Origin: Guillardia theta CCMP2712
Lineage: Eukaryota; Protista; Cryptophyta
Reading direction: 5' to 3'
Assembly (NCBI RefSeq): GCF_000315625.1
Contig: NW_005434483.1
Location: forward strand, 42,569 to 92,934
DNA length: 50,366 nt
Every line of letters begins with the position of its first letter. Position 1 is the first letter of the stretch. The notes under the pieces are model-generated. The model was not told where the DNA came from. It searched no databases and saw only the letters and a list, made by a program, of their open reading frames with translations. Of the stretch, positions 38,520 through 47,250 are shown piece after piece. The position numbers and the translations under genes are program-made.

Positions 38520-40699
38520 ATGAAGGTCTGGCATGTTGCCCTACTAGTGTCGACGCTCTGGCTGTATGCGGAAGGCTTCACTTTCCTGTCCCCTCTCAGC
38601 CTCGGCATCTCGCGTCCTCAAAGAGGATTGAGTCGCTGCCAAAGAGCCCCGGGTGGCTCCTGGACGCGAGGAGGGAGAAGCAGACTTCACGCTTCGAGCA
38701 GAGGAGCCTTGGGAGTCTTTTCCGAGCCAGACCCTCCACCTGAGAACATCCTCAAGGCAGTAGATAGAGCAGGAGGAAGAGTTACGGTTGCCGATGTCGC
38801 AACTTCTGCTGGAGTGTCGTTGAACGAGGCCAAGAAGCAGGTGAGAACACCGAGAGTCTGCTTCTGTCCTCTCACTCTTGTCTAGCTCAACGTGCTAGCT
38901 CAACTTGCCGACGGGAACCTGGAGGTTCGCAAGGGCCCAAGGAGATTCCAAGACGTGAGCTTTATTCGCAGGTGTCCAAAGACGGCGAGCTCGTCTACGT
39001 GTTCTCGGCAGGGTTCAGAAATGAGCTGCTATCTCGCTCAGCCAAAAAGAGAATCCAACAAGGATGGGACAAGGTGCCTTGTTGCAACATGTGAGTCGCA
39101 CTGAAACTACTCAGGTTGCCCCAATCTTATTCTACATGGTCAAAGTTTCGTTTGGGATTGCGCTGATCTCTTCCATTGCTCTCATCTTCACTGCCATCCT
39201 TGTGCTGCAATCATCTTCTCGAGATGATCGAGATGATCGTCGAGGTTTGTTGTGAGACGGGTGCAGACAGGAGTAACGAGGATGTAGGATACTCGTCAGG
39301 CGGAGGTTTCAGCTTCTACATGGGCCCTTCCTACTGGTGGGGACCTTCGCCCTTTGACATCTTTTACTTCAGCTCGTCTTCTCCGTACGGGGTCAACCGA
39401 TACGACAACCCTTCGCAGCTTTCTTTCCTCGAGTCAGTCTTCTCGTTCCTCTTTGGTGATGGCAATCCAAACGCAAATTTCGAGCAGCGGAGGTATAAAG
39501 CCCTAGCCAACTTGATCCGAGCCAAGGGTGGAGTTGTGACAGCAGAGGAAGTGGCTGGATACCTTGATCCTCCCGCTGAGCCCGACGAGGACAAGCTGGT
39601 TGATGAATCCTTCGTCCTTCCTGCTCTCACTCAGCTGGGGGGGATGCCGGAAGTGACTGAGAGTGGCGACATCGTGTATGTGTTCGAGGATCTTCAGTTG
39701 TCAGCAGCGGCAGCAAACGACCAGGGGTGGGAGAAGCTTTCCTTGCAAGAGCTGACGAAGCTCGCGAAGAGCGAAGGCATCTCGACAAGAGGGGTCTACG
39801 AGAAGGATGACCTGCTGGCGGTCATCCGAGCAGCTCGAGAGACGAGAAGCGTAAAGAGCAATCAGGAAGGAGATCGGGTTGCGACTTATCTCGACGAGAA
39901 GCCCTTCCAGTTTAGCTTGGCGACGTCAGGGCAGGTGAGGAAGAGGGATGCGAAAGCTCTTACTGAAGGGTTGGGAAGCAACTGGCGGTCGGAGCTCTAG
40001 CGGCTGTCAATCTGTTCGGGGCTCTCTACCTAGGTGAGAGGAGAGGTCGACAACTTGAGTCAAGTTGCTGCCAGGGAACCTCTTTGCGTCGCCCTACCTT
40101 GTTGGACGAGAGCTGATCGGTCTGCTGGGATTCGTCAAGGCGATTTACCCCTTGCTGGTGCTTCCTCTAGAGCTTGAGATCTCAGTCGCTGATGCTGCGC
40201 TAGCTTGCTTACGGAGTCGCTTTCGTGGCTGTACCGGCTGCTCGATACTTGAAGCTGCAGGCAAGTATGACAGGTGGTAGATGATGTAGGAGGGGAAAGA
40301 AAGTGAAAGAGATCCATCAAGGAAAGCGCTGGGAGGAGGACAAGTGGACTAGCGCTGATGGTGATGCAGGCTGATAATCGTAAGATCGAGAAGAGAAACC
40401 GTCTTCGCGCTCTTTGGGCCTTCGCATTGCGCAAGGTTGGAGAAACATATGCTGTGGCAGAGAAAGTTTACGAGCATGGCAGGGAGGCCGAAACCTCGAG
40501 AGGAAACTGACAGAGGCGAGGAAGAGGTCACAAGGCGTGAAGTTGATAAAGGAACAAGACATCGAGTACACTACAGGAAAGAGCATCGAAGAACAAGGTG
40601 CTGATATAAGCTTGATGTTGACAAGCTTTGATGTGCGAGTGAGCAGGCCTCGACCTCAAGGCATGGGATGCCAAGTATCTCAACAAGGATGAGAAATGA
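38520..40699 (+). CDS. Plastid-targeted At5g03900-like membrane protein (multi-exon)
   Basis: Signal peptide ...YAEG|F. Segments AVDRAGGRVTVADVATSAG...LEVSKDGELVYVF, FLESVFSFLFGDGNPN and GGMPEVTESGDIVYVF match my recollection of this cyanobacterial/plastid family. Confidence 0.8.
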
Positions 40700-40760: not shown

Positions 40761-43700
40761 TTACAACCATGCTGGCTTCCTCTTACTCCTCTCGCTCCCA
40801 GTGCTCACTCCCTTCAGCTTAGGCTCGTCGATGTCGACTAGAGCATGCAAAGAGAACTCTCTCTTCTTTTCCAAGTCCATGAGCTGAGAGATACTCCCTT
40901 TCAACCCCCCCGGCTTCGTCGCCATTTCATCCGGCAACGCTGTCTTGCGCTCATCGTCACCTTCGTCTCCATCCCCGTGCTCTTCATCTGCTGCATTCCC
41001 CAACTCGGAGAGAGCTCTCGCTGGCTCTGCCGAGCTTTGCGGCTCTTCTTGCTGCTCCTCCTGCCTCTCGCCGGAGCTGCTCGGCTGCACGTTCAAGTCA
41101 TCGACCTGCTCCGAGTCCGAAGCGAGAGCAGAGGTGTACGAATCCTTGCGCTGCGGCATCGCTCGAAGCATGTCATTCTCTACTTGCAGGAACTGCAGTC
41201 GGTCTTGAACCTCCTTGAGGGTCTGCAGGAGCTCCTCCTTCTTCTTCTTCTCCTCTTCGACGGCAAACTTGAGCCGCTCCAGGTCATCCAGCATCTCATG
41301 CAGCTCCTCTTGAGCCACGGGCTCTTCCTCCTCTGAGGTCAGGTTCTGCGCCGAATCTCGAAGCGTCTGGGCGTGAGACAGGAGGGCGAGCAGCTCGTCT
41401 TCACTCAGTTCTTTCAGATCCTCTGCGCTCTCATACTTGAACTTATGCTCCATCGCGGCTTGTTGTACAAACGTTTCTTCATGGGCCTCCAGCATGGCCT
41501 CCAGCGTATCTCTGACTGACACCCATCGAACCATCGCCTCCATTTCCCTCAACTTCATCGCTCGCCGCAGGGTCTCAGCGTCAAGGCCGAGGATGCCGAC
41601 AGAGCCGACAGACATGCCGGCCTCTTCGGCGATCTCCGCGAGTTCATGCCCAGACTTCAACCCATAGGTGACCATCTTGGCGATGAGCTTCTCGTCCTCG
41701 GAAGAGTTTCCGATGAGAATCTCGCGGCAGGCTTCCTTCGAGGTGTTGGCATCTTGCATCTTGCGTTTAGTCGTCAGCAGGTTGAGCACGTTCACTTCAT
41801 GGAACTCGTCTTCTTCCCTCTCCTCCCGTCGACTCTCTTTCAGCTTCTTCATTCGCCACCGTTGAATCCACCCCTTGACAAGAGCCTGCAAGATGCTCTG
41901 CGCCACTTGCTCGCTGATCGCCAGGTCCCTCTTCTTGTTGATCACGCGGAATTGCCGAGGGACGAGGTCGTGCATGTCGGACCAGTAGATGGCTTTTTCT
42001 ATGAAGTCGTCGAATCGCACGTACCCTCGTTTTGTCTCACTGCGATTGCTCCTGACTTTGATCGAGTCCAATGAATCATGAAGATAGTTGAAAACCCTGA
42101 TCACAAGCAGTCAAGTGAGCAAGCCTTCCATGCAGGTCACCTGGTCTTGATTCTTCTCCAAAGAGGCTGCTTGCTGACATCCTTGCGTTCGTCCTGCCAT
42201 CCGTCAAGCAAAACCATCAAGACCAATGCAGTACCTGGTGTGATGTCCCCGTAGTCCTGTTTCTCAAGATATTTGAAGCTCTAAACACTGTAGTGATCAT
42301 GTAAACACCCTTTCCCACCTCCATCTGTTTGTCAGCGAGTTGTCTGAGGTCTTCTCGAATCTTCAAGCATCTCAAACGCCTATGCTTGACGCTGTTGTAG
42401 CCAAGAGGATCTCCTATTACCTTCAACAAAGATCCGATCCTCTCAAGTTGTACGAAGCCTTGAACATCAGGAGACGCATAGAGGTCCATCCACACGTAAG
42501 ACACTGCTTTGATGTCCTTGTCTTTCACAAGCTCTTCTTCCTTTTGAAGGCAATAGTTGAAATTGTTGAAGATGATGCCGAAGAAAAGATGGATCATAGA
42601 GTACTCACAGACCAGATTGTAGAGCATGAAGAAGACGTAAGAGAATATCGGATTTCCGCAATCAGAGTAATACTCCGTTGCACCATGATAATATACTGAT
42701 ATTCTTGGAGTGCAAGAAGGAAGGGACACAGTACAATCGTCCATGATGTCTTGCCATGGCGCTCCAAGTAAAATTTGTATCAAAGCAAAGAATGCATTCC
42801 CAAAGCCTGAGAAGTTCAAGCCCGGGCCCAACGTACTTCCAAAGCGAACATTACCGAGAAATTGATGTCCCAAGACCGCAAAGATGGAGGCGACAGCGAC
42901 GAAGACAACCATGACATTGAAGATCTGAGCCAAACTCATCGTAAGAGTGTCGAAAAGAACCCCGACCATCCTGATTTCTGAAGCAAAGGTGCTGATGACT
43001 CTGAAGAGGCGAATTACCCTCAGCAGCTGCGTCAGCGATCGCATCCACGGCAGTAAGATGTAGAATGCGATGGTTAGAATGATCATCAAGAAATCAAACA
43101 GAGTCGCAGAGTCTTTCAAACAATACTCAAGTCCGTATCCAAGCAAGTACAGGCTGAATTCAACGCACATGAAACCAAAGAAAACATCATTCTGCACAGC
43201 AATCAAGAAGGAAAAAAGTGGAGAAGCGTTGGAATGATCGGTCGCGATGAAGAGCACATTTATGCTTATACAGCAGATCGTAAAGATTCGGAACCAGTAA
43301 GTTTGAAGGATTCTCTGCAGACTAAGTGCAAGTGGATGGGATAATGGTTTCATTCTCCTTGTTGGCCAATTGTATCGAATCAATTTCTGGATTACCCCCC
43401 ACTTGAAGTCACTCTTACTTTTCCTTGCTGCCTCTGATCCCTCAAAGCCTAGGCAGATGAAAGCGATGATCAGCTGAAAGACGATGAAAGAGTTGACGGT
43501 GATAACAACCACTAGGAATGCTGAAGCCTCGACCTCGGAAAAGTTTGATACTGGTTGCAGGCCTCGCTTGTAGGCATTCTTGGCTAGTTTCCAAATGCTA
43601 GACCATTTCAACATGGAGATGCGGTACAAGGTGAGGCAGGAATGATGGAAGGAGTTGAAGTCATACGGAGGAGACGACCAGACCCTCGGAAGGGAAATAA

Positions 43701-46700
43701 ATTCCGGAGTCAAGAAGATACCGGTACACTCAACCTGTCCCTCCCCTTTCAATCCGTCAAGGCTCGTGTCATTGCAAGCGAAGAAGAGTTGACTGAACAA
43801 AGACATTCCAAACACTGCAAAAACCTGTAAAGCAGCAAGTCAAACAAGAGACATGACTTGCCTCATGAACTCACCATGCAGTTAACAAAGATGAGGATCA
43901 GGACGTATGTGATTGGTTTAGCTGAGTGCACCAGTGCATTTAGAATGTCTCGGATCCCCTCATTCCGCCCGACGATTCGCAGAAATCGAAAGATCCTGAC
44001 GATTCTGAATACCTTGGCAGTATTGCGCCCTAGGTATGCTCCCAGCCCCACAACGTCGAGAAACGATGCCACGGAGATGAGGAGATCAGCTCTGTTTGCA
44101 CTCGTTTGCCAGTAAGCGGGATGATGATTCCATCGTGGAATGAACATCCCATACGCCAATATCTTACACAAGGCCTCGAAAATAAACACAATGGTGCATG
44201 AGAGATCAGCATATTGTCGAAATTGCTTTTCAAATGTTGACTGATAGATGGTCAACGAAGAACTAGAATAAAGGAGGGCGCAGCTTATGAAAATGCAAAT
44301 CATCACCAATGCTTCCATCGCCATTGTGTTTGTGACAATCAGACATTGCTTGGAGAGTTTGTTGAAGAACCATTCCATGTCACGTGTGACCTTCCAATGC
44401 TGCGTCTCTAAACGTTGATGATAAAAACTCAATCTGCGCACAGATTTGGTAATCGTATCGAAATTCTTTCGTACGATTCCTGATGCATCAACATGGGAGA
44501 GGTTAGATTTTACTTTTCTTGCAGCACTGAAAAAGTGTGAATACACTTTTCGAGAGAACATTTCAAGTTTCGTACGCGTCTGAAGCCAAAATAATCCCCA
44601 TTGAAGCATTGGCTGTTTTGCATTGACGTATTTAATCAACTTGTCCTTCTCAATGCAGCCAACAACTGAAATTTCTTCGAACGCTAAGTTGATGATGTCT
44701 TCTGAGATCTTGTCTTCGCTAACACCAAAATGTTTTGAAAGGTATGCGATGGCTTGTTGGTTGTTGAAGATCAGATTCTCGCTGTCGTCCTTGTCTTGAT
44801 CAATCGACATGGACAGCGAGTCCAAAGAATAAAATTGAATCAAAACACTCAGAAACAAAGTGAATATGATGATTTGCCCTATGAAATAAGCAAATATGAA
44901 GAAGAGGGCAACCACCAAAGCGAACCCAACATCACATTCAGAGCTCAGTCCAGTGCAAACAAGGTACATTGAGTTGTACATCAAGTGAGTCCAGTTGTCA
45001 CCAGAGATGATATGAAAGAGCAACATGAAACCATTCCCAAATGTCGAAAAGTACGGTTCTGTCGCAGTTTCAAATCCCTGAAACACGGATCGTCCTAGAG
45101 TGATATACCCAAGAAAGAACATACCAGCAAATATGCAGACATTTCCAAACAAAGGAGCACAGTGAGCCGTGGTTTTTAGAATATGCCAGATGGAAACAAG
45201 AAGAAGGAGATGTGCGAGCCTGTAAAGTCGAAAGACAGCAGCATCCCTCAGAAAGCTTGTGTCATTCGCACTTAGCCCAAGGCTTTCAGCCAGAAATGAC
45301 ACGGTACATATCATCGTAATCAAGAATTCATAAATGTTCTCTCCGACCTCAAAGTGTCGATGCAGGGAACCGTCACATAGAACTTGCATGGTCCAGTTGC
45401 AAAGGAAGTATATAGCGAAGGCATTCTGGACAGCAACATCTAGGGATGCAAATCCAGAGTTGAAATACTGAGGAACAAAAAAAGCTATTGAATTCGCCAA
45501 GATAGATAAAGTAAGAACAAGGTGATATCCTCGTGAGCGGAAGAACACTGACAAGAATGCTTCGAGCGTGCGCTCCTCCTTCTCTTCTGATTTCTTGGCT
45601 ATTTCAATCATTTGAGCCACATTCCGATCATTCACTGGGGCTGCCACGACAGGCTCCTCATCGTCATCATCCTCTGGCTCAGAAAGCTGCTGCTCTCCTG
45701 CTGCAGCTCCGTCCTGTTGCTTCTCGGCAGCATAGGATGCTGGGAGCTCGGGGTGAATCTTGTGGGAGGTTGGAGGATGAGGTAATGGTCGGCTCTCTCG
45801 CATTTGAAGGAGGAACGTGGTCAGCGACGCGATAAAGATGTTCAATATGAACTGACGAAGAAAGACCATGACAGCCAACAAGTATACAAGGGAGATGATG
45901 GCTAGACCTGGCTCTGACTGATAGGTGGCCCACAGGATGGTTGAAGGGTCATCACGACAGAGTGTCTGAAATATCGACAGGAAGGCATCTACAAAACAGT
46001 TAGTATGAATTTTAGCCCAAAGTTCGAATCACATGGAATCATGTCATAGTTGACAAAACCAAACTGTGGGTTTCCAACGTAAAGACATGCTTGCATAGGC
46101 CCACAGTTGTTGTTGAGTCCCAACGAGGTCATTCCTTCATCTTCATATTGTTTGCACCATTGAGGGGGCCATCTGATTTGAAGCGTATCTGCCCAAACCT
46201 GAGAGTGCAATCGTCATAGACCAATGGTAGAGAGACAAGGGGAGAATTACACATCTCCGCTGAAAGGATAGACTATACAGGTTGATTCCAATTACTGCGA
46301 AGATTATGAAGGAGAAGATCAGCATGAAGCATAATATTAACGATGAAGAGATAAATTTTGTAAGTGCTTGAAAAATTACTTCCAATTCCATAAAAAATTC
46401 TAGTTTTGTCAAGGGCTTCAAAAGTCGGAACAGTCGAAAGGCACGAAATGAGAAAGAGATATCGAAGTACAGCGCAATGGTTTCGATTAGACAAGATACA
46501 GTTACAAAAAAGTCAATCTTGTTAAACGCATCGTAGCGGAAGTATGAGAATTTGCTTTCAAAGAAACCACTTGCTATTGATTTGATAGCAATCTCGAGCG
46601 AATAAAGGCCCACAAAACAGAAGCTTGTCCAGATAGGAAAAACAACTCTGCACTTAAGTTGAGTGCCTGAGCTGGTTTGACATCCAAGCACATGCTCTTG

Positions 46701-47250
46701 AAAATCTGGCATAAGCAACATGAAATGAAACAGTGTGACCGACATCCAGAAACATTCTGCCACATAGCTGGTAGAGATCAGAATGCATAGGCGCCGTGTG
46801 TTTGACTGAACTGTGCAGCCAAAGAGGTTCTTCTCTGGGAAATCTTGGTGCGTGAGTTTGATACAAGGCATGCACATAACCTCATGATGCTCCCTTGCGT
46901 CTCTCTCTGCCTGCTCGATCACCTTTCGTGCTCGTGTTGCAGCATCCAACGTGTCGTCGATGTTGATCACCCCCACTTTGTCGTTGTGCAGGAGCTTCTG
47001 ATCCACTTCCACCAATGTCTGGTAAAATGATGAGCATAGAACAACAAGACAAGTGAAAAATCACCGCAGCAGATCGCTGAAAGAAGTCATGAACCTAGAA
47101 AGAAAGGTGAGGTCACGCATACAAGAAGCGGCAACACACCTCCACGTCTCGCGTCTCTCCTTCACTCTCTTTGATTGAGTGCAGTGACGAGGTGGCTTCA
47201 TGTTGGCTTCTGAATCGATTGAGAGCCGTGAAGGCTCCCCATCGCACCAT
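40761..47250 (-). CDS. Four-domain voltage-gated cation channel alpha subunit (Nav/Cav superfamily) with IQ motif
   Basis: Four S4 segments (FRAFRLFRLLK, AAVFRLYRLAH, KVFRIVRIFRFLR, LLRVIRLFR), four P-loops, IQ-like ILQALVKGWIQRWR and a coiled-coil tail. The start at 47250 is reached via two small phase-0 exons. Confidence 0.92.

What the first reader, a model, noticed from the sequence alone, without database searches (positions are those of the whole stretch)
42760..45953. Algal four-domain channel with a sodium-channel-like D/D/K/A selectivity filter
I aligned the P-loops by eye to Nav1.5/Cav. DI FQTLCRD (Asp 45953-45951) matches FRLMTQD, and DII FHIISGDNW gives Asp (44999-44997). DIII LYRISMLKW (Lys 43608-43606) matches LQVATFKGW, and DIV IQILLGAPW (Ala 42762-42760) matches FQITTSAGW. 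The DIII Lys plus DIV Ala are the established determinants of Na+ selectivity in animal Nav1 (DEKA), whereas typical Cav-type channels use all-acidic rings. This could be convergent Na+ selectivity in an alga. The pore is also divergent: the DI Trp is replaced by Pro, DIII has a one-residue deletion, and the III-IV linker has no IFM motif.
Basis: partly seen in the sequence, partly recalled or inferred. Interest (0 to 1): 0.75.

Follow-up and report, generated by a model that had tools for sequence, protein, structure and literature searches.

The report
Algal channel with Asp/Asp/Lys/Ala pore
The alga Guillardia theta has an intact, expressed four-domain voltage-gated channel gene whose pore ring reads Asp/Asp/Lys/Ala, the closest match outside animals to the sodium-channel DEKA ring; it is a diverged member of a lysine-bearing channel family already described in cryptophytes, and its ion preference has never been measured.

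Summary

They belong to an 8-exon gene (47250-40761) with seven GT-AG introns of 41-52 nt. Its translation is identical to a 2055-aa MMETSP transcript protein (P0153), so the gene is transcribed and spliced.

Pairwise HMMER and a 76-sequence alignment put these residues in the selectivity-filter columns of Cav/Nav.

The gene is not an isolated oddity. It sits (SH-aLRT 99) in a protist clade with a Trp-less domain I, a one-residue-shorter domain III loop carrying Lys, and Asp-Glu in domain IV. This D/D/K/D type was reported for Guillardia and oomycetes in 2018 (PMC5824947). G. theta has at least nine such paralogues.

Only this gene and a 96%-identical metagenomic orthologue have Ala-Pro in domain IV, a derived change on a long branch. 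dN/dS is about 0.26-0.33.

The Lys and the Ala arose independently of animal Nav1. Sodium selectivity is plausible but untested. Because of the deletion, the exact position of the Lys side chain is uncertain.

The scan has noted other non-canonical four-domain channels elsewhere in this genome, but not this one.

The parts
47140..47250 (-). Exon 1 with the start codon (ATG at 47250-47248); N-terminal cytoplasmic region
   Evidence: Splice search that reproduces the N-terminus of transcript protein P0153; the model's translation equals P0153
47065..47094 (-). Exon 2 (30 nt), flanked by introns 47139-47095 (45 nt) and 47064-47019 (46 nt)
46251..47018 (-). Exon 3: N-terminal region and domain I S1-S5. 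S4 has R239/R242/R245/K248 at every third position
   Evidence: Pfam Ion_trans; sequence
46033..46198 (-). Exon 4: domain I extracellular turret. Preceded by intron 46250-46199 (52 nt) and followed by intron 46032-45989 (44 nt, TACTAAC branch site)
43875..45988 (-). Exon 5: domain I P-loop and S6, all of domain II, II-III linker, and domain III S1 to the first half of S5
   Evidence: Pfam Ion_trans; identity to P0153
42235..43824 (-). Exon 6: rest of domain III S5, DIII P-loop and S6, III-IV linker (no IFM), all of domain IV, and the proximal C-terminal domain. Preceded by intron 43874-43825 (50 nt)
42141..42193 (-). Exon 7 (53 nt), between introns 42234-42194 (41 nt) and 42140-42097 (44 nt)
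40761..42096 (-). Exon 8: long acidic, coiled-coil-like C-terminal tail and the stop codon (40763-40761); no Pfam domain
45951..45953 (-). Domain I filter codon GAT = Asp371 (context CRDDP; Pro where Trp normally is)
44997..44999 (-). Domain II filter codon GAC = Asp689 (context SGDNW)
43606..43608 (-). Domain III filter codon AAA = Lys1136 (context SMLKW; the loop is one residue shorter than TFEGW)
42760..42762 (-). Domain IV filter codon GCG = Ala1418 (context LGAPW; relatives have GDEW)

Best explanation
[quoted passage not shown] It is a fast-diverged paralogue within the protist Lys-bearing D/D/K/D clade.

Shown:
- The gene is intact, spliced and transcribed.
- It has four Ion_trans repeats.
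- S4 helices in domains I, III and IV carry four, five and three basic residues at every third position. Domain II has two Arg plus a His.
- By homology the pore ring is Asp371/Asp689/Lys1136/Ala1418.
- The Ala (with Pro next to it) replaced the family's Asp-Glu on the branch leading to this gene.
- The ring is kept in a 4%-diverged orthologue under purifying selection.

Inferred:
- Depolarisation moves the S4 helices and opens the S6 gate.
- The ring has net charge -1, as in animal DEKA. The family's D/D/K/D ring has -2 and Cav's EEEE has -4.
- Such a ring cannot hold Ca2+ tightly, so the channel conducts monovalent cations, most likely with a preference for Na+, and little Ca2+.
- In this marine flagellate that would give a depolarising Na+ current separate from Ca2+ signalling.

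High Na+/K+ discrimination like that of Nav1 is the least certain step, because DI lacks the pore Trp and the DIII loop is one residue short.
For: - Gene model and expression: the exon translation is identical to MMETSP transcript protein P0153.
- Family: Pfam finds four Ion_trans repeats at E = 7e-97. PDB hits to Nav1.5, Cav1.1 and Cav1.2 have E about 1e-32. Foldseek matches the AlphaFold model of exon 6 to Cav1.x, NALCN, NavPaS and Nav1.7 at E about 1e-15.
- Ring assignment: HMMER DIII-to-DIII alignments, paralogue and relative motifs T-[LFIV]-K-[WY] against T-F-E-G-W, and the MAFFT alignment of 76 rows. Within the short-loop clade this same column alternates K/E/R/Q/N, as a filter column would.
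- Clade placement and derived Ala: tree with SH-aLRT 99-100.
- Constraint: orthologue L020 is 96% identical in DNA, keeps Lys and Ala-Pro, and gives dN/dS 0.26-0.33.
- Lys as the key to Na+ selectivity or permeability in DEKA, DKEA, EEKE and EKEE rings: PMC5824947 and PMC6259924.
Against: - No electrophysiology exists for any member of this clade.
- The DIII loop is one residue short. AlphaFold places Lys as the last loop residue directly before the P2 helix (loop Met-Leu-Lys), so its side chain may sit between the canonical ring and ring+1 levels.
- DI lacks the conserved pore Trp and DIV has Pro at ring+1, so pore geometry may differ from Nav1.
- Other Nav1 features are absent: there is no IFM, and DII does not have Glu at ring+4 (it has His).
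- The long stem branch (1.46 substitutions per site) and a moderate dN/dS are also compatible with partly relaxed constraint.
- The AlphaFold model covers only domains III (pore) and IV, at mean pLDDT 74.
Confidence: 0.55

Rival explanations
1. The channel is a poorly selective monovalent-cation channel that passes both Na+ and K+ and may be blocked by Ca2+. Functionally it would be nearer to NALCN (EEKE) than to Nav1. The Lys excludes Ca2+, but the altered pore (no DI Trp, short DIII loop, DIV Pro) does not discriminate Na+ from K+.
For: - Lys-containing rings in NALCN give Na+ permeability without high selectivity (PMC5824947).
- The pore departs from Nav1 at DI, DIII and DIV.
- NALCN is among the best structural matches.
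Against: - NALCN has charge-poor S4 helices and is voltage-insensitive. This protein keeps three charge-rich S4s.
- Sequence similarity to NALCN is much weaker (E about 1e-18) than to Nav or Cav (E about 1e-32).
- The ring charge (-1) equals that of DEKA, not EEKE (-2).
Confidence: 0.28
2. The ring is really Asp/Asp/Leu/Ala. If the DIII alignment is anchored on the P2 Trp, Leu1135 takes the filter position and Lys1136 lies at ring+1 in the outer vestibule. There it would act as an electrostatic gatekeeper rather than as the Nav1-type ring lysine.
For: - AlphaFold gives a canonical three-residue loop Met-Leu-Lys between P1 (59-70) and P2 (from Trp74 of exon 6), with Leu in the middle. In DIV, Ala is the middle residue of Gly-Ala-Pro.
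- Low-scoring cross-domain HMMER alignments put Leu opposite Glu.
Against: - All significant homologous-domain alignments and the 76-row alignment put Lys opposite Glu.
- Paralogues read S-A-M-I-S-L-F-R-V-T-T-F-K, matching Cav S-A-M-M-S-L-F-T-V-S-T-F-E residue for residue up to the Lys.
- Members of the clade that lack Lys have E, R, Q or N in that same column.
- DSSP helix ends are only good to about one residue.
Confidence: 0.1
3. The gene is a decaying or non-conducting paralogue. After duplication it lost pore function (hence the loss of acidic DIV residues and the long branch). It persists as a voltage sensor or scaffold, or is on its way to becoming a pseudogene.
For: - Long stem branch of 1.46 substitutions per site.
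- No orthologue was found outside Guillardia-like DNA.
- dN/dS rises to 0.5 in the proximal C-terminal part.
- DII S4 is charge-poor.
Against: - The 2055-codon frame is open across 8 exons and all splice sites are intact.
- The gene is transcribed.
- dN/dS is 0.26 in the membrane part. Lys and Ala-Pro are kept in the orthologue, and there are no indels over 3187 nt.
Confidence: 0.07

Closest known systems
Lys-bearing D/D/K/D(G) four-domain channels of Guillardia (WSC VIII) and oomycetes (WSC VI) in Pozdnyakov et al. 2018 (PMC5824947)
   Same: - Same clade (SH-aLRT 99).
- DI has Asp and no Trp. DII has G-D-x-W.
- DIII has T/S-x-K-[WY] with the one-residue-shorter loop.
- DII S4 is charge-poor.
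- The paper's Guillt6 corresponds to the C89 locus. S4 strings like those of Guillt7 occur in L003, L005 and L008. These loci are paralogues of this gene.
   Different: - DIV reads Gly-Ala-Pro-Trp instead of Gly-Asp-Glu-Trp. Both the ring Asp and the ring+1 Glu that the paper notes in all Lys-bearing cryptophyte and oomycete channels are gone.
- This gene is not among the paper's ten Guillardia sequences.
- It sits on a long branch, at 39% identity or less to any paralogue.
Animal Nav1 sodium channels (DEKA ring)
   Same: - Four-domain architecture.
- Lys in DIII and Ala in DIV.
- Ring net charge -1.
- Short III-IV linker of about 55 residues.
- Charge-rich S4 in DI, DIII and DIV.
   Different: - Independent origin: not in the Nav clade.
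- DII has Asp rather than Glu.
- There is no IFM inactivation motif.
- DI lacks the pore Trp.
- The DIII loop lacks the Gly after Lys.
- DII ring+4 is His, not the Glu described for Nav (PMC6259924).
NALCN sodium-leak channel (EEKE/EKEE)
   Same: - Lys in the ring among acidic residues.
- Four domains.
- Among the best Foldseek matches, at E of order 1e-15.
   Different: - NALCN has three acidic ring residues and charge-poor S4s.
- Its sequence match is far weaker (E about 1e-18 against 1e-32 for Nav/Cav).
- It lies in a different clade.
EukCatB single-domain Na+-selective channels of haptophytes, also present in cryptophytes (bioRxiv 10.1101/2020.04.29.068528)
   Same: An algal route to Na+-based excitability that is independent of animal Nav1.
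   Different: EukCatB channels are homotetramers of one-domain subunits with no ring lysine, and they have been measured. The present channel is a four-domain protein and has not been measured.

Membership tests
[quoted passage not shown] | Four tandem six-helix Ion_trans repeats in one polypeptide | tested here: met
   Pfam PF00520 matches four stretches on P0153 at E = 7.4e-97; each large exon also matches
[quoted passage not shown] | S4 helices with basic residues at every third position | tested here: met
   DI has R239/R242/R245/K248. DIII has K1017/R1020/R1023/R1026/R1029. DIV has R1332/R1335/R1338. DII has only R612/R615/H618
[quoted passage not shown] | Significant sequence and fold similarity to solved Cav/Nav channels, with a P1 helix-loop-P2 helix pore loop | tested here: met
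   phmmer E about 1e-32 to Nav1.5, Cav1.1 and Cav1.2. The AlphaFold model shows P1-loop-P2 in DIII and DIV. Foldseek E about 1e-16 to Cav1.1 and Cav1.2
Protist Lys-bearing D/D/K/D clade (Pozdnyakov 2018, WSC VIII/VI) | Lys in the DIII filter column, within the one-residue-shorter T/S-x-K-[WY] loop | tested here: met
   S-M-L-K-W here; T-L-K-W, T-F-K-Y or T-I-K-Y in 8 G. theta paralogues and in 19 of 29 clade members
Protist Lys-bearing D/D/K/D clade (Pozdnyakov 2018, WSC VIII/VI) | Phylogenetic placement inside the clade | tested here: met
   The 29-row clade has SH-aLRT 99 and the 11-row subclade 99 (quick IQ-TREE search, no bootstrap)
Protist Lys-bearing D/D/K/D clade (Pozdnyakov 2018, WSC VIII/VI) | Acidic DIV filter residue with Asp/Glu at ring+1 (G-D-E-W) | tested here: not met
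   G-A-P-W here and in orthologue P0001. All the other clade rows have Asp or Glu in the DIV ring column
Animal Nav1 (DEKA) sodium channels | D/E/K/A ring | tested here: inconclusive
   The ring is D/D/K/A. Three of four residues are identical and DII has Asp for Glu. The exact position of Lys is uncertain because of the DIII deletion
Animal Nav1 (DEKA) sodium channels | Descent from the Nav2/Nav1 lineage | tested here: not met
   Four of the five rows with Glu in DIII and Ala in DIV (read by me as Nav2-like from their DEEA-type motifs; the library gives no names) form a separate clade at the root. P0049, with E/A, lies elsewhere. The gene is nested among protist channels
Animal Nav1 (DEKA) sodium channels | IFM-type fast-inactivation motif in the III-IV linker | tested here: not met
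   The linker at aa 1187-1241 has no IFM; the nearest motif is S-D-F-K-W
Animal Nav1 (DEKA) sodium channels | Na+-selective permeation | not testable with these tools
   Needs electrophysiology
NALCN | EEKE/EKEE ring together with charge-poor, voltage-insensitive S4s | tested here: not met
   The ring has two acidic residues, not three. Three S4s are charge-rich. The sequence match is weaker

The most novel reading that the evidence does not exclude
This is a truly Na+-selective, voltage-gated four-domain channel that reached a DEKA-like ring (Lys in DIII, then loss of the DIV acid) independently of animals. It would be the first four-domain sodium channel in a photosynthetic eukaryote. Its D/D/K/D paralogues in the same cell would preserve the intermediate step.
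Probability: 0.3. Interest if true: 0.8.

Novelty: new variant of a known kind. Interest (0 to 1): 0.5.

Why it matters
According to the literature read here, four-domain Na+-selective channels are known only from animals. There the DIII (or DII) lysine is the decisive step away from Ca2+-permeable ancestors.

The cryptophyte/oomycete Lys-bearing clade is a published but unmeasured candidate for a second origin. This paralogue goes one step further: it has lost both DIV acidic residues, giving the same ring charge as DEKA.

It sits in one genome beside at least eight D/D/K/D paralogues. That offers a natural series for testing what the fourth ring position and the ring+1 residue contribute.

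It also shows that the public gene model is truncated, which is probably why the 2018 survey missed it.

Tried and rejected
- **Word-index search, exon 6 product.** Only three hits, because candidates are limited by length. The HMMER representative search was needed.
- **Word-index search, P0153 region 1064-1500.** It returned the NCBI model and then mostly animal Cav1. It was not useful for the protist clade.
- **JGI metagenome contig scan for further orthologues.** None found.
- **Structure route to settle Lys against Leu.** Only exon 6 (530 aa) could be folded. The full protein exceeds the 1200-residue limit, and the tools return no coordinates or residue-level superposition. The model gives helix boundaries only. 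Foldseek does not separate Cav, Nav and NALCN.
- **Foreign origin or odd composition.** The low G+C (42-46%) of the membrane exons was considered. It was rejected because paralogues L002 and L006 are similar and the gene has normal spliceosomal introns.
- **Literature search for 'DDKA' with 'selectivity filter'.** No papers.
- **Membership of Nav1 and of NALCN.** Both rejected (see the membership tests).
Full report
**What is there.** The finding lies in a gene on the minus strand from 47250 (ATG) to 40761 (stop).

Six-frame reading showed three long open frames joined by short gaps with canonical GT...AG ends. A look-up of the 90% cluster of the nearest database hit returned P0153, a 2055-residue protein from an MMETSP transcript assembly. 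P0153 is 100% identical to the window across exons 6, 7 and 8 in tblastn, and it also revealed two small 5' exons.

The final model has 8 exons: 47250-47140, 47094-47065, 47018-46251, 46198-46033, 45988-43875, 43824-42235, 42193-42141 and 42096-40761. The seven GT-AG introns are 41-52 nt long, and one has a TACTAAC branch site.

**The joined step.** In a script I made one yes/no comparison: the translation of this model equals P0153 exactly. Exons were searched by window reference, and the full-length product was used only as the database protein P0153, by its id.

**Organism and public model.**
- The genome is Guillardia theta CCMP2712. The NCBI protein on this contig is GUITHDRAFT_148154 (P0190), on a 92,934-base contig. 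The window's own contig, C191, spans at least to base 92,934.
- That public model has only 1740 residues. It lacks residues 80-303 (domain I S1-S5) and 851-941 of the transcript-supported protein.

**Checking the observation.**
- The protein has four Ion_trans repeats (E = 7e-97). Its best solved relatives are Nav1.5, Cav1.1 and Cav1.2 (E about 1e-32); NALCN is weaker (E about 1e-18).
- The significant domain III to domain III alignments with Cav1.1 and Cav1.2 place Lys opposite the filter Glu and the one-residue gap opposite the following Gly.
- Domains I and II align without gaps, Asp opposite Glu. In domain IV, Ala aligns opposite Glu or Asp.

**Relatives.** A search of the gene's own genome found at least eight further paralogous loci of the same type, at 26-39% identity (the nearest 39%).
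- All eight read T-[LFI]-K-[WY] in domain III, with the same length, one residue shorter than the T-F-E-G-W of Cav.
- All eight read G-D-E-W in domain IV.

The HMMER search of 1.84 billion representatives gave 3322 hits. The nearest form the same family. Where domains I and II are available they read x-D-[SG]-x-Y (no Trp) and G-D-[SN]-W. Named members are cryptophytes: Hanusia phi, Hemiselmis rufescens and Teleaulax amphioxeia.

**Alignment and tree.** A MAFFT alignment of 76 rows independently places the gap after the Lys. In the maximum-likelihood tree:
- The short-loop clade of 29 rows has SH-aLRT 99.
- Within it the filter column alternates K (21 rows), E, R, Q, N, G and P, as expected of a ring position.
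- The window gene plus P0001 (support 100) sits on a long stem (1.46 substitutions per site) inside an 11-row subclade (support 99).
- Every other member of the clade, and its nearest outgroups, is acidic in domain IV. The Ala is therefore derived.
- Four of the five rows with Glu in DIII and Ala in DIV, which I read as Nav2-like from their motifs, form a separate clade. Both the Lys and the Ala therefore arose independently of animal sodium channels.
- The tree was a quick search with SH-aLRT support only, and its root is imposed.

**What is already known.** Pozdnyakov et al. 2018 (PMC5824947) report D/D/K/D(G) filters in Guillardia (their clade WSC VIII) and in oomycetes (WSC VI).
- They note that all such channels have Asp or Glu at ring+1 of domain IV.
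- They name them candidates for Na+-selective or Na+-permeable channels.
- Their ten Guillardia sequences have S4 strings different from this gene's. Guillt6 maps to the C89 paralogue, and Guillt7-like S4 strings occur in L003, L005 and L008.

The family is therefore in print, but this paralogue is not, probably because its RefSeq model is truncated. No paper in the library holds 'DDKA' together with 'selectivity filter'.

Other relevant statements from the literature:
- Helliwell et al. state that Na+-selective voltage-gated channels had not been described in eukaryotes other than animals, and they describe single-domain Na+-selective EukCatB channels in haptophytes (bioRxiv 10.1101/2020.04.29.068528).

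**Constraint.** P0001 comes from a 3187-nt metagenomic contig (ENA ERZ930064, L020).
- The contig aligns to the window without any gap at 96.0% DNA identity, introns included.
- It keeps S-T-L-K-W and G-A-P-W.
- Nei-Gojobori dN/dS is 0.26 for the membrane part of exon 6, 0.33 for the whole exon, and 0.25 for exon 8, at dS about 0.1. This indicates purifying selection, though not strong.
- No more distant orthologue was found.

**Structure.** AlphaFold2 on the exon 6 product with a 27-row alignment gave mean pLDDT 73.9.
- In domain IV, helix P1 ends at Leu353. The loop is Gly-Ala-Pro, and P2 starts at Trp357. Ala is the middle loop residue, as the ring residue is in the canonical T-G-E-A-W reading (my own knowledge; no solved structure was inspected here).
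- In domain III, P1 ends at Ser70 and the loop is Met-Leu-Lys. P2 starts at Trp74, so Lys directly precedes P2.

By homology Lys is therefore the ring residue and the ring+1 residue is deleted. By distance from P2 it could sit between ring and ring+1, with Leu1135 nearer the canonical ring place. The tools give no coordinates and the full protein is too long to fold, so this stays open. I rate the Leu reading at about 0.1. Foldseek matches Cav1.x, NALCN, NavPaS and Nav1.7 about equally well.

**Mechanism.**
- Shown: an intact, expressed four-domain channel with charge-rich S4s in domains I, III and IV and a D/D/K/A ring by homology.
- Inferred from established knowledge of DEKA, DKEA and EEKE rings: a ring of net charge -1 with a lysine cannot bind Ca2+ tightly, so the channel should pass monovalent cations, probably favouring Na+.
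- The degree of Na+/K+ discrimination is uncertain because of the missing domain I Trp, the short domain III loop and the domain IV Pro.
- There is no IFM motif, so any fast inactivation would work otherwise.

**Verdict.** This is a new variant (D/D/K/A) of a known, unmeasured kind (the cryptophyte/oomycete D/D/K/D channels). Earlier agents of this scan noted other non-canonical four-domain channels on other contigs of this genome (S/S/R/D, K/D/D/D, T/S/D/D, E/A/D/D, T/S/S/A). None of those is this gene or this ring.

Noticed in passing
window 40761-47250 (minus strand): The public NCBI model GUITHDRAFT_148154 (P0190, 1740 aa) lacks residues 80-303 (domain I S1-S5) and 851-941 of the transcript-supported 2055-aa protein P0153. 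The RefSeq annotation of this channel is therefore truncated.
   Followed up: yes
G000 loci L002-L008, L015 (contigs C3, C4, C29, C128, C38, C87, C104, C89): G. theta carries at least eight further paralogues of the Lys-bearing clade, all with T-x-K-[WY] in domain III and G-D-E-W in domain IV. The 2018 survey listed ten Guillardia channels, and only two of them (Guillt6 and Guillt7) have S4 strings matching loci of this clade.
   Followed up: partly
P0002, P0003, P0011 (metagenomic relatives, about 33% identity): This subclade has domain III A-F-K-I-G-W, so the alignment places Gly in the ring column and the Lys two residues earlier. Its domain IV reads G-D-E-L-E without the pore Trp. This is another unexplained pore variant.
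   Followed up: no
P0034 and P0049 (hits of the representative search): P0034 has Arg in the domain III ring column and G-E-P-W in domain IV. P0049 has a normal-length E-G-W loop in domain III with Ala in domain IV (G-A-N-W). These are further protist rings with a basic residue or an Ala.
   Followed up: no
window introns 47139-47095, 47064-47019, 46250-46199, 46032-45989, 43874-43825, 42234-42194, 42140-42097: All seven introns are very short (41-52 nt) and GT-AG. The one at 46032-45989 carries a yeast-like TACTAAC branch site.
   Followed up: partly
window 39176-40000 (+): A 274-aa open frame converges on the channel gene's 3' end and has no Pfam match. It was not examined further.
   Followed up: partly
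L020 (ENA ERZ930064, run ERR2281809, project PRJEB17505): A metagenome holds a contig 96% identical to G. theta over 3187 nt with no indels, introns included. This points to a second, very close Guillardia lineage in the environment.
   Followed up: partly
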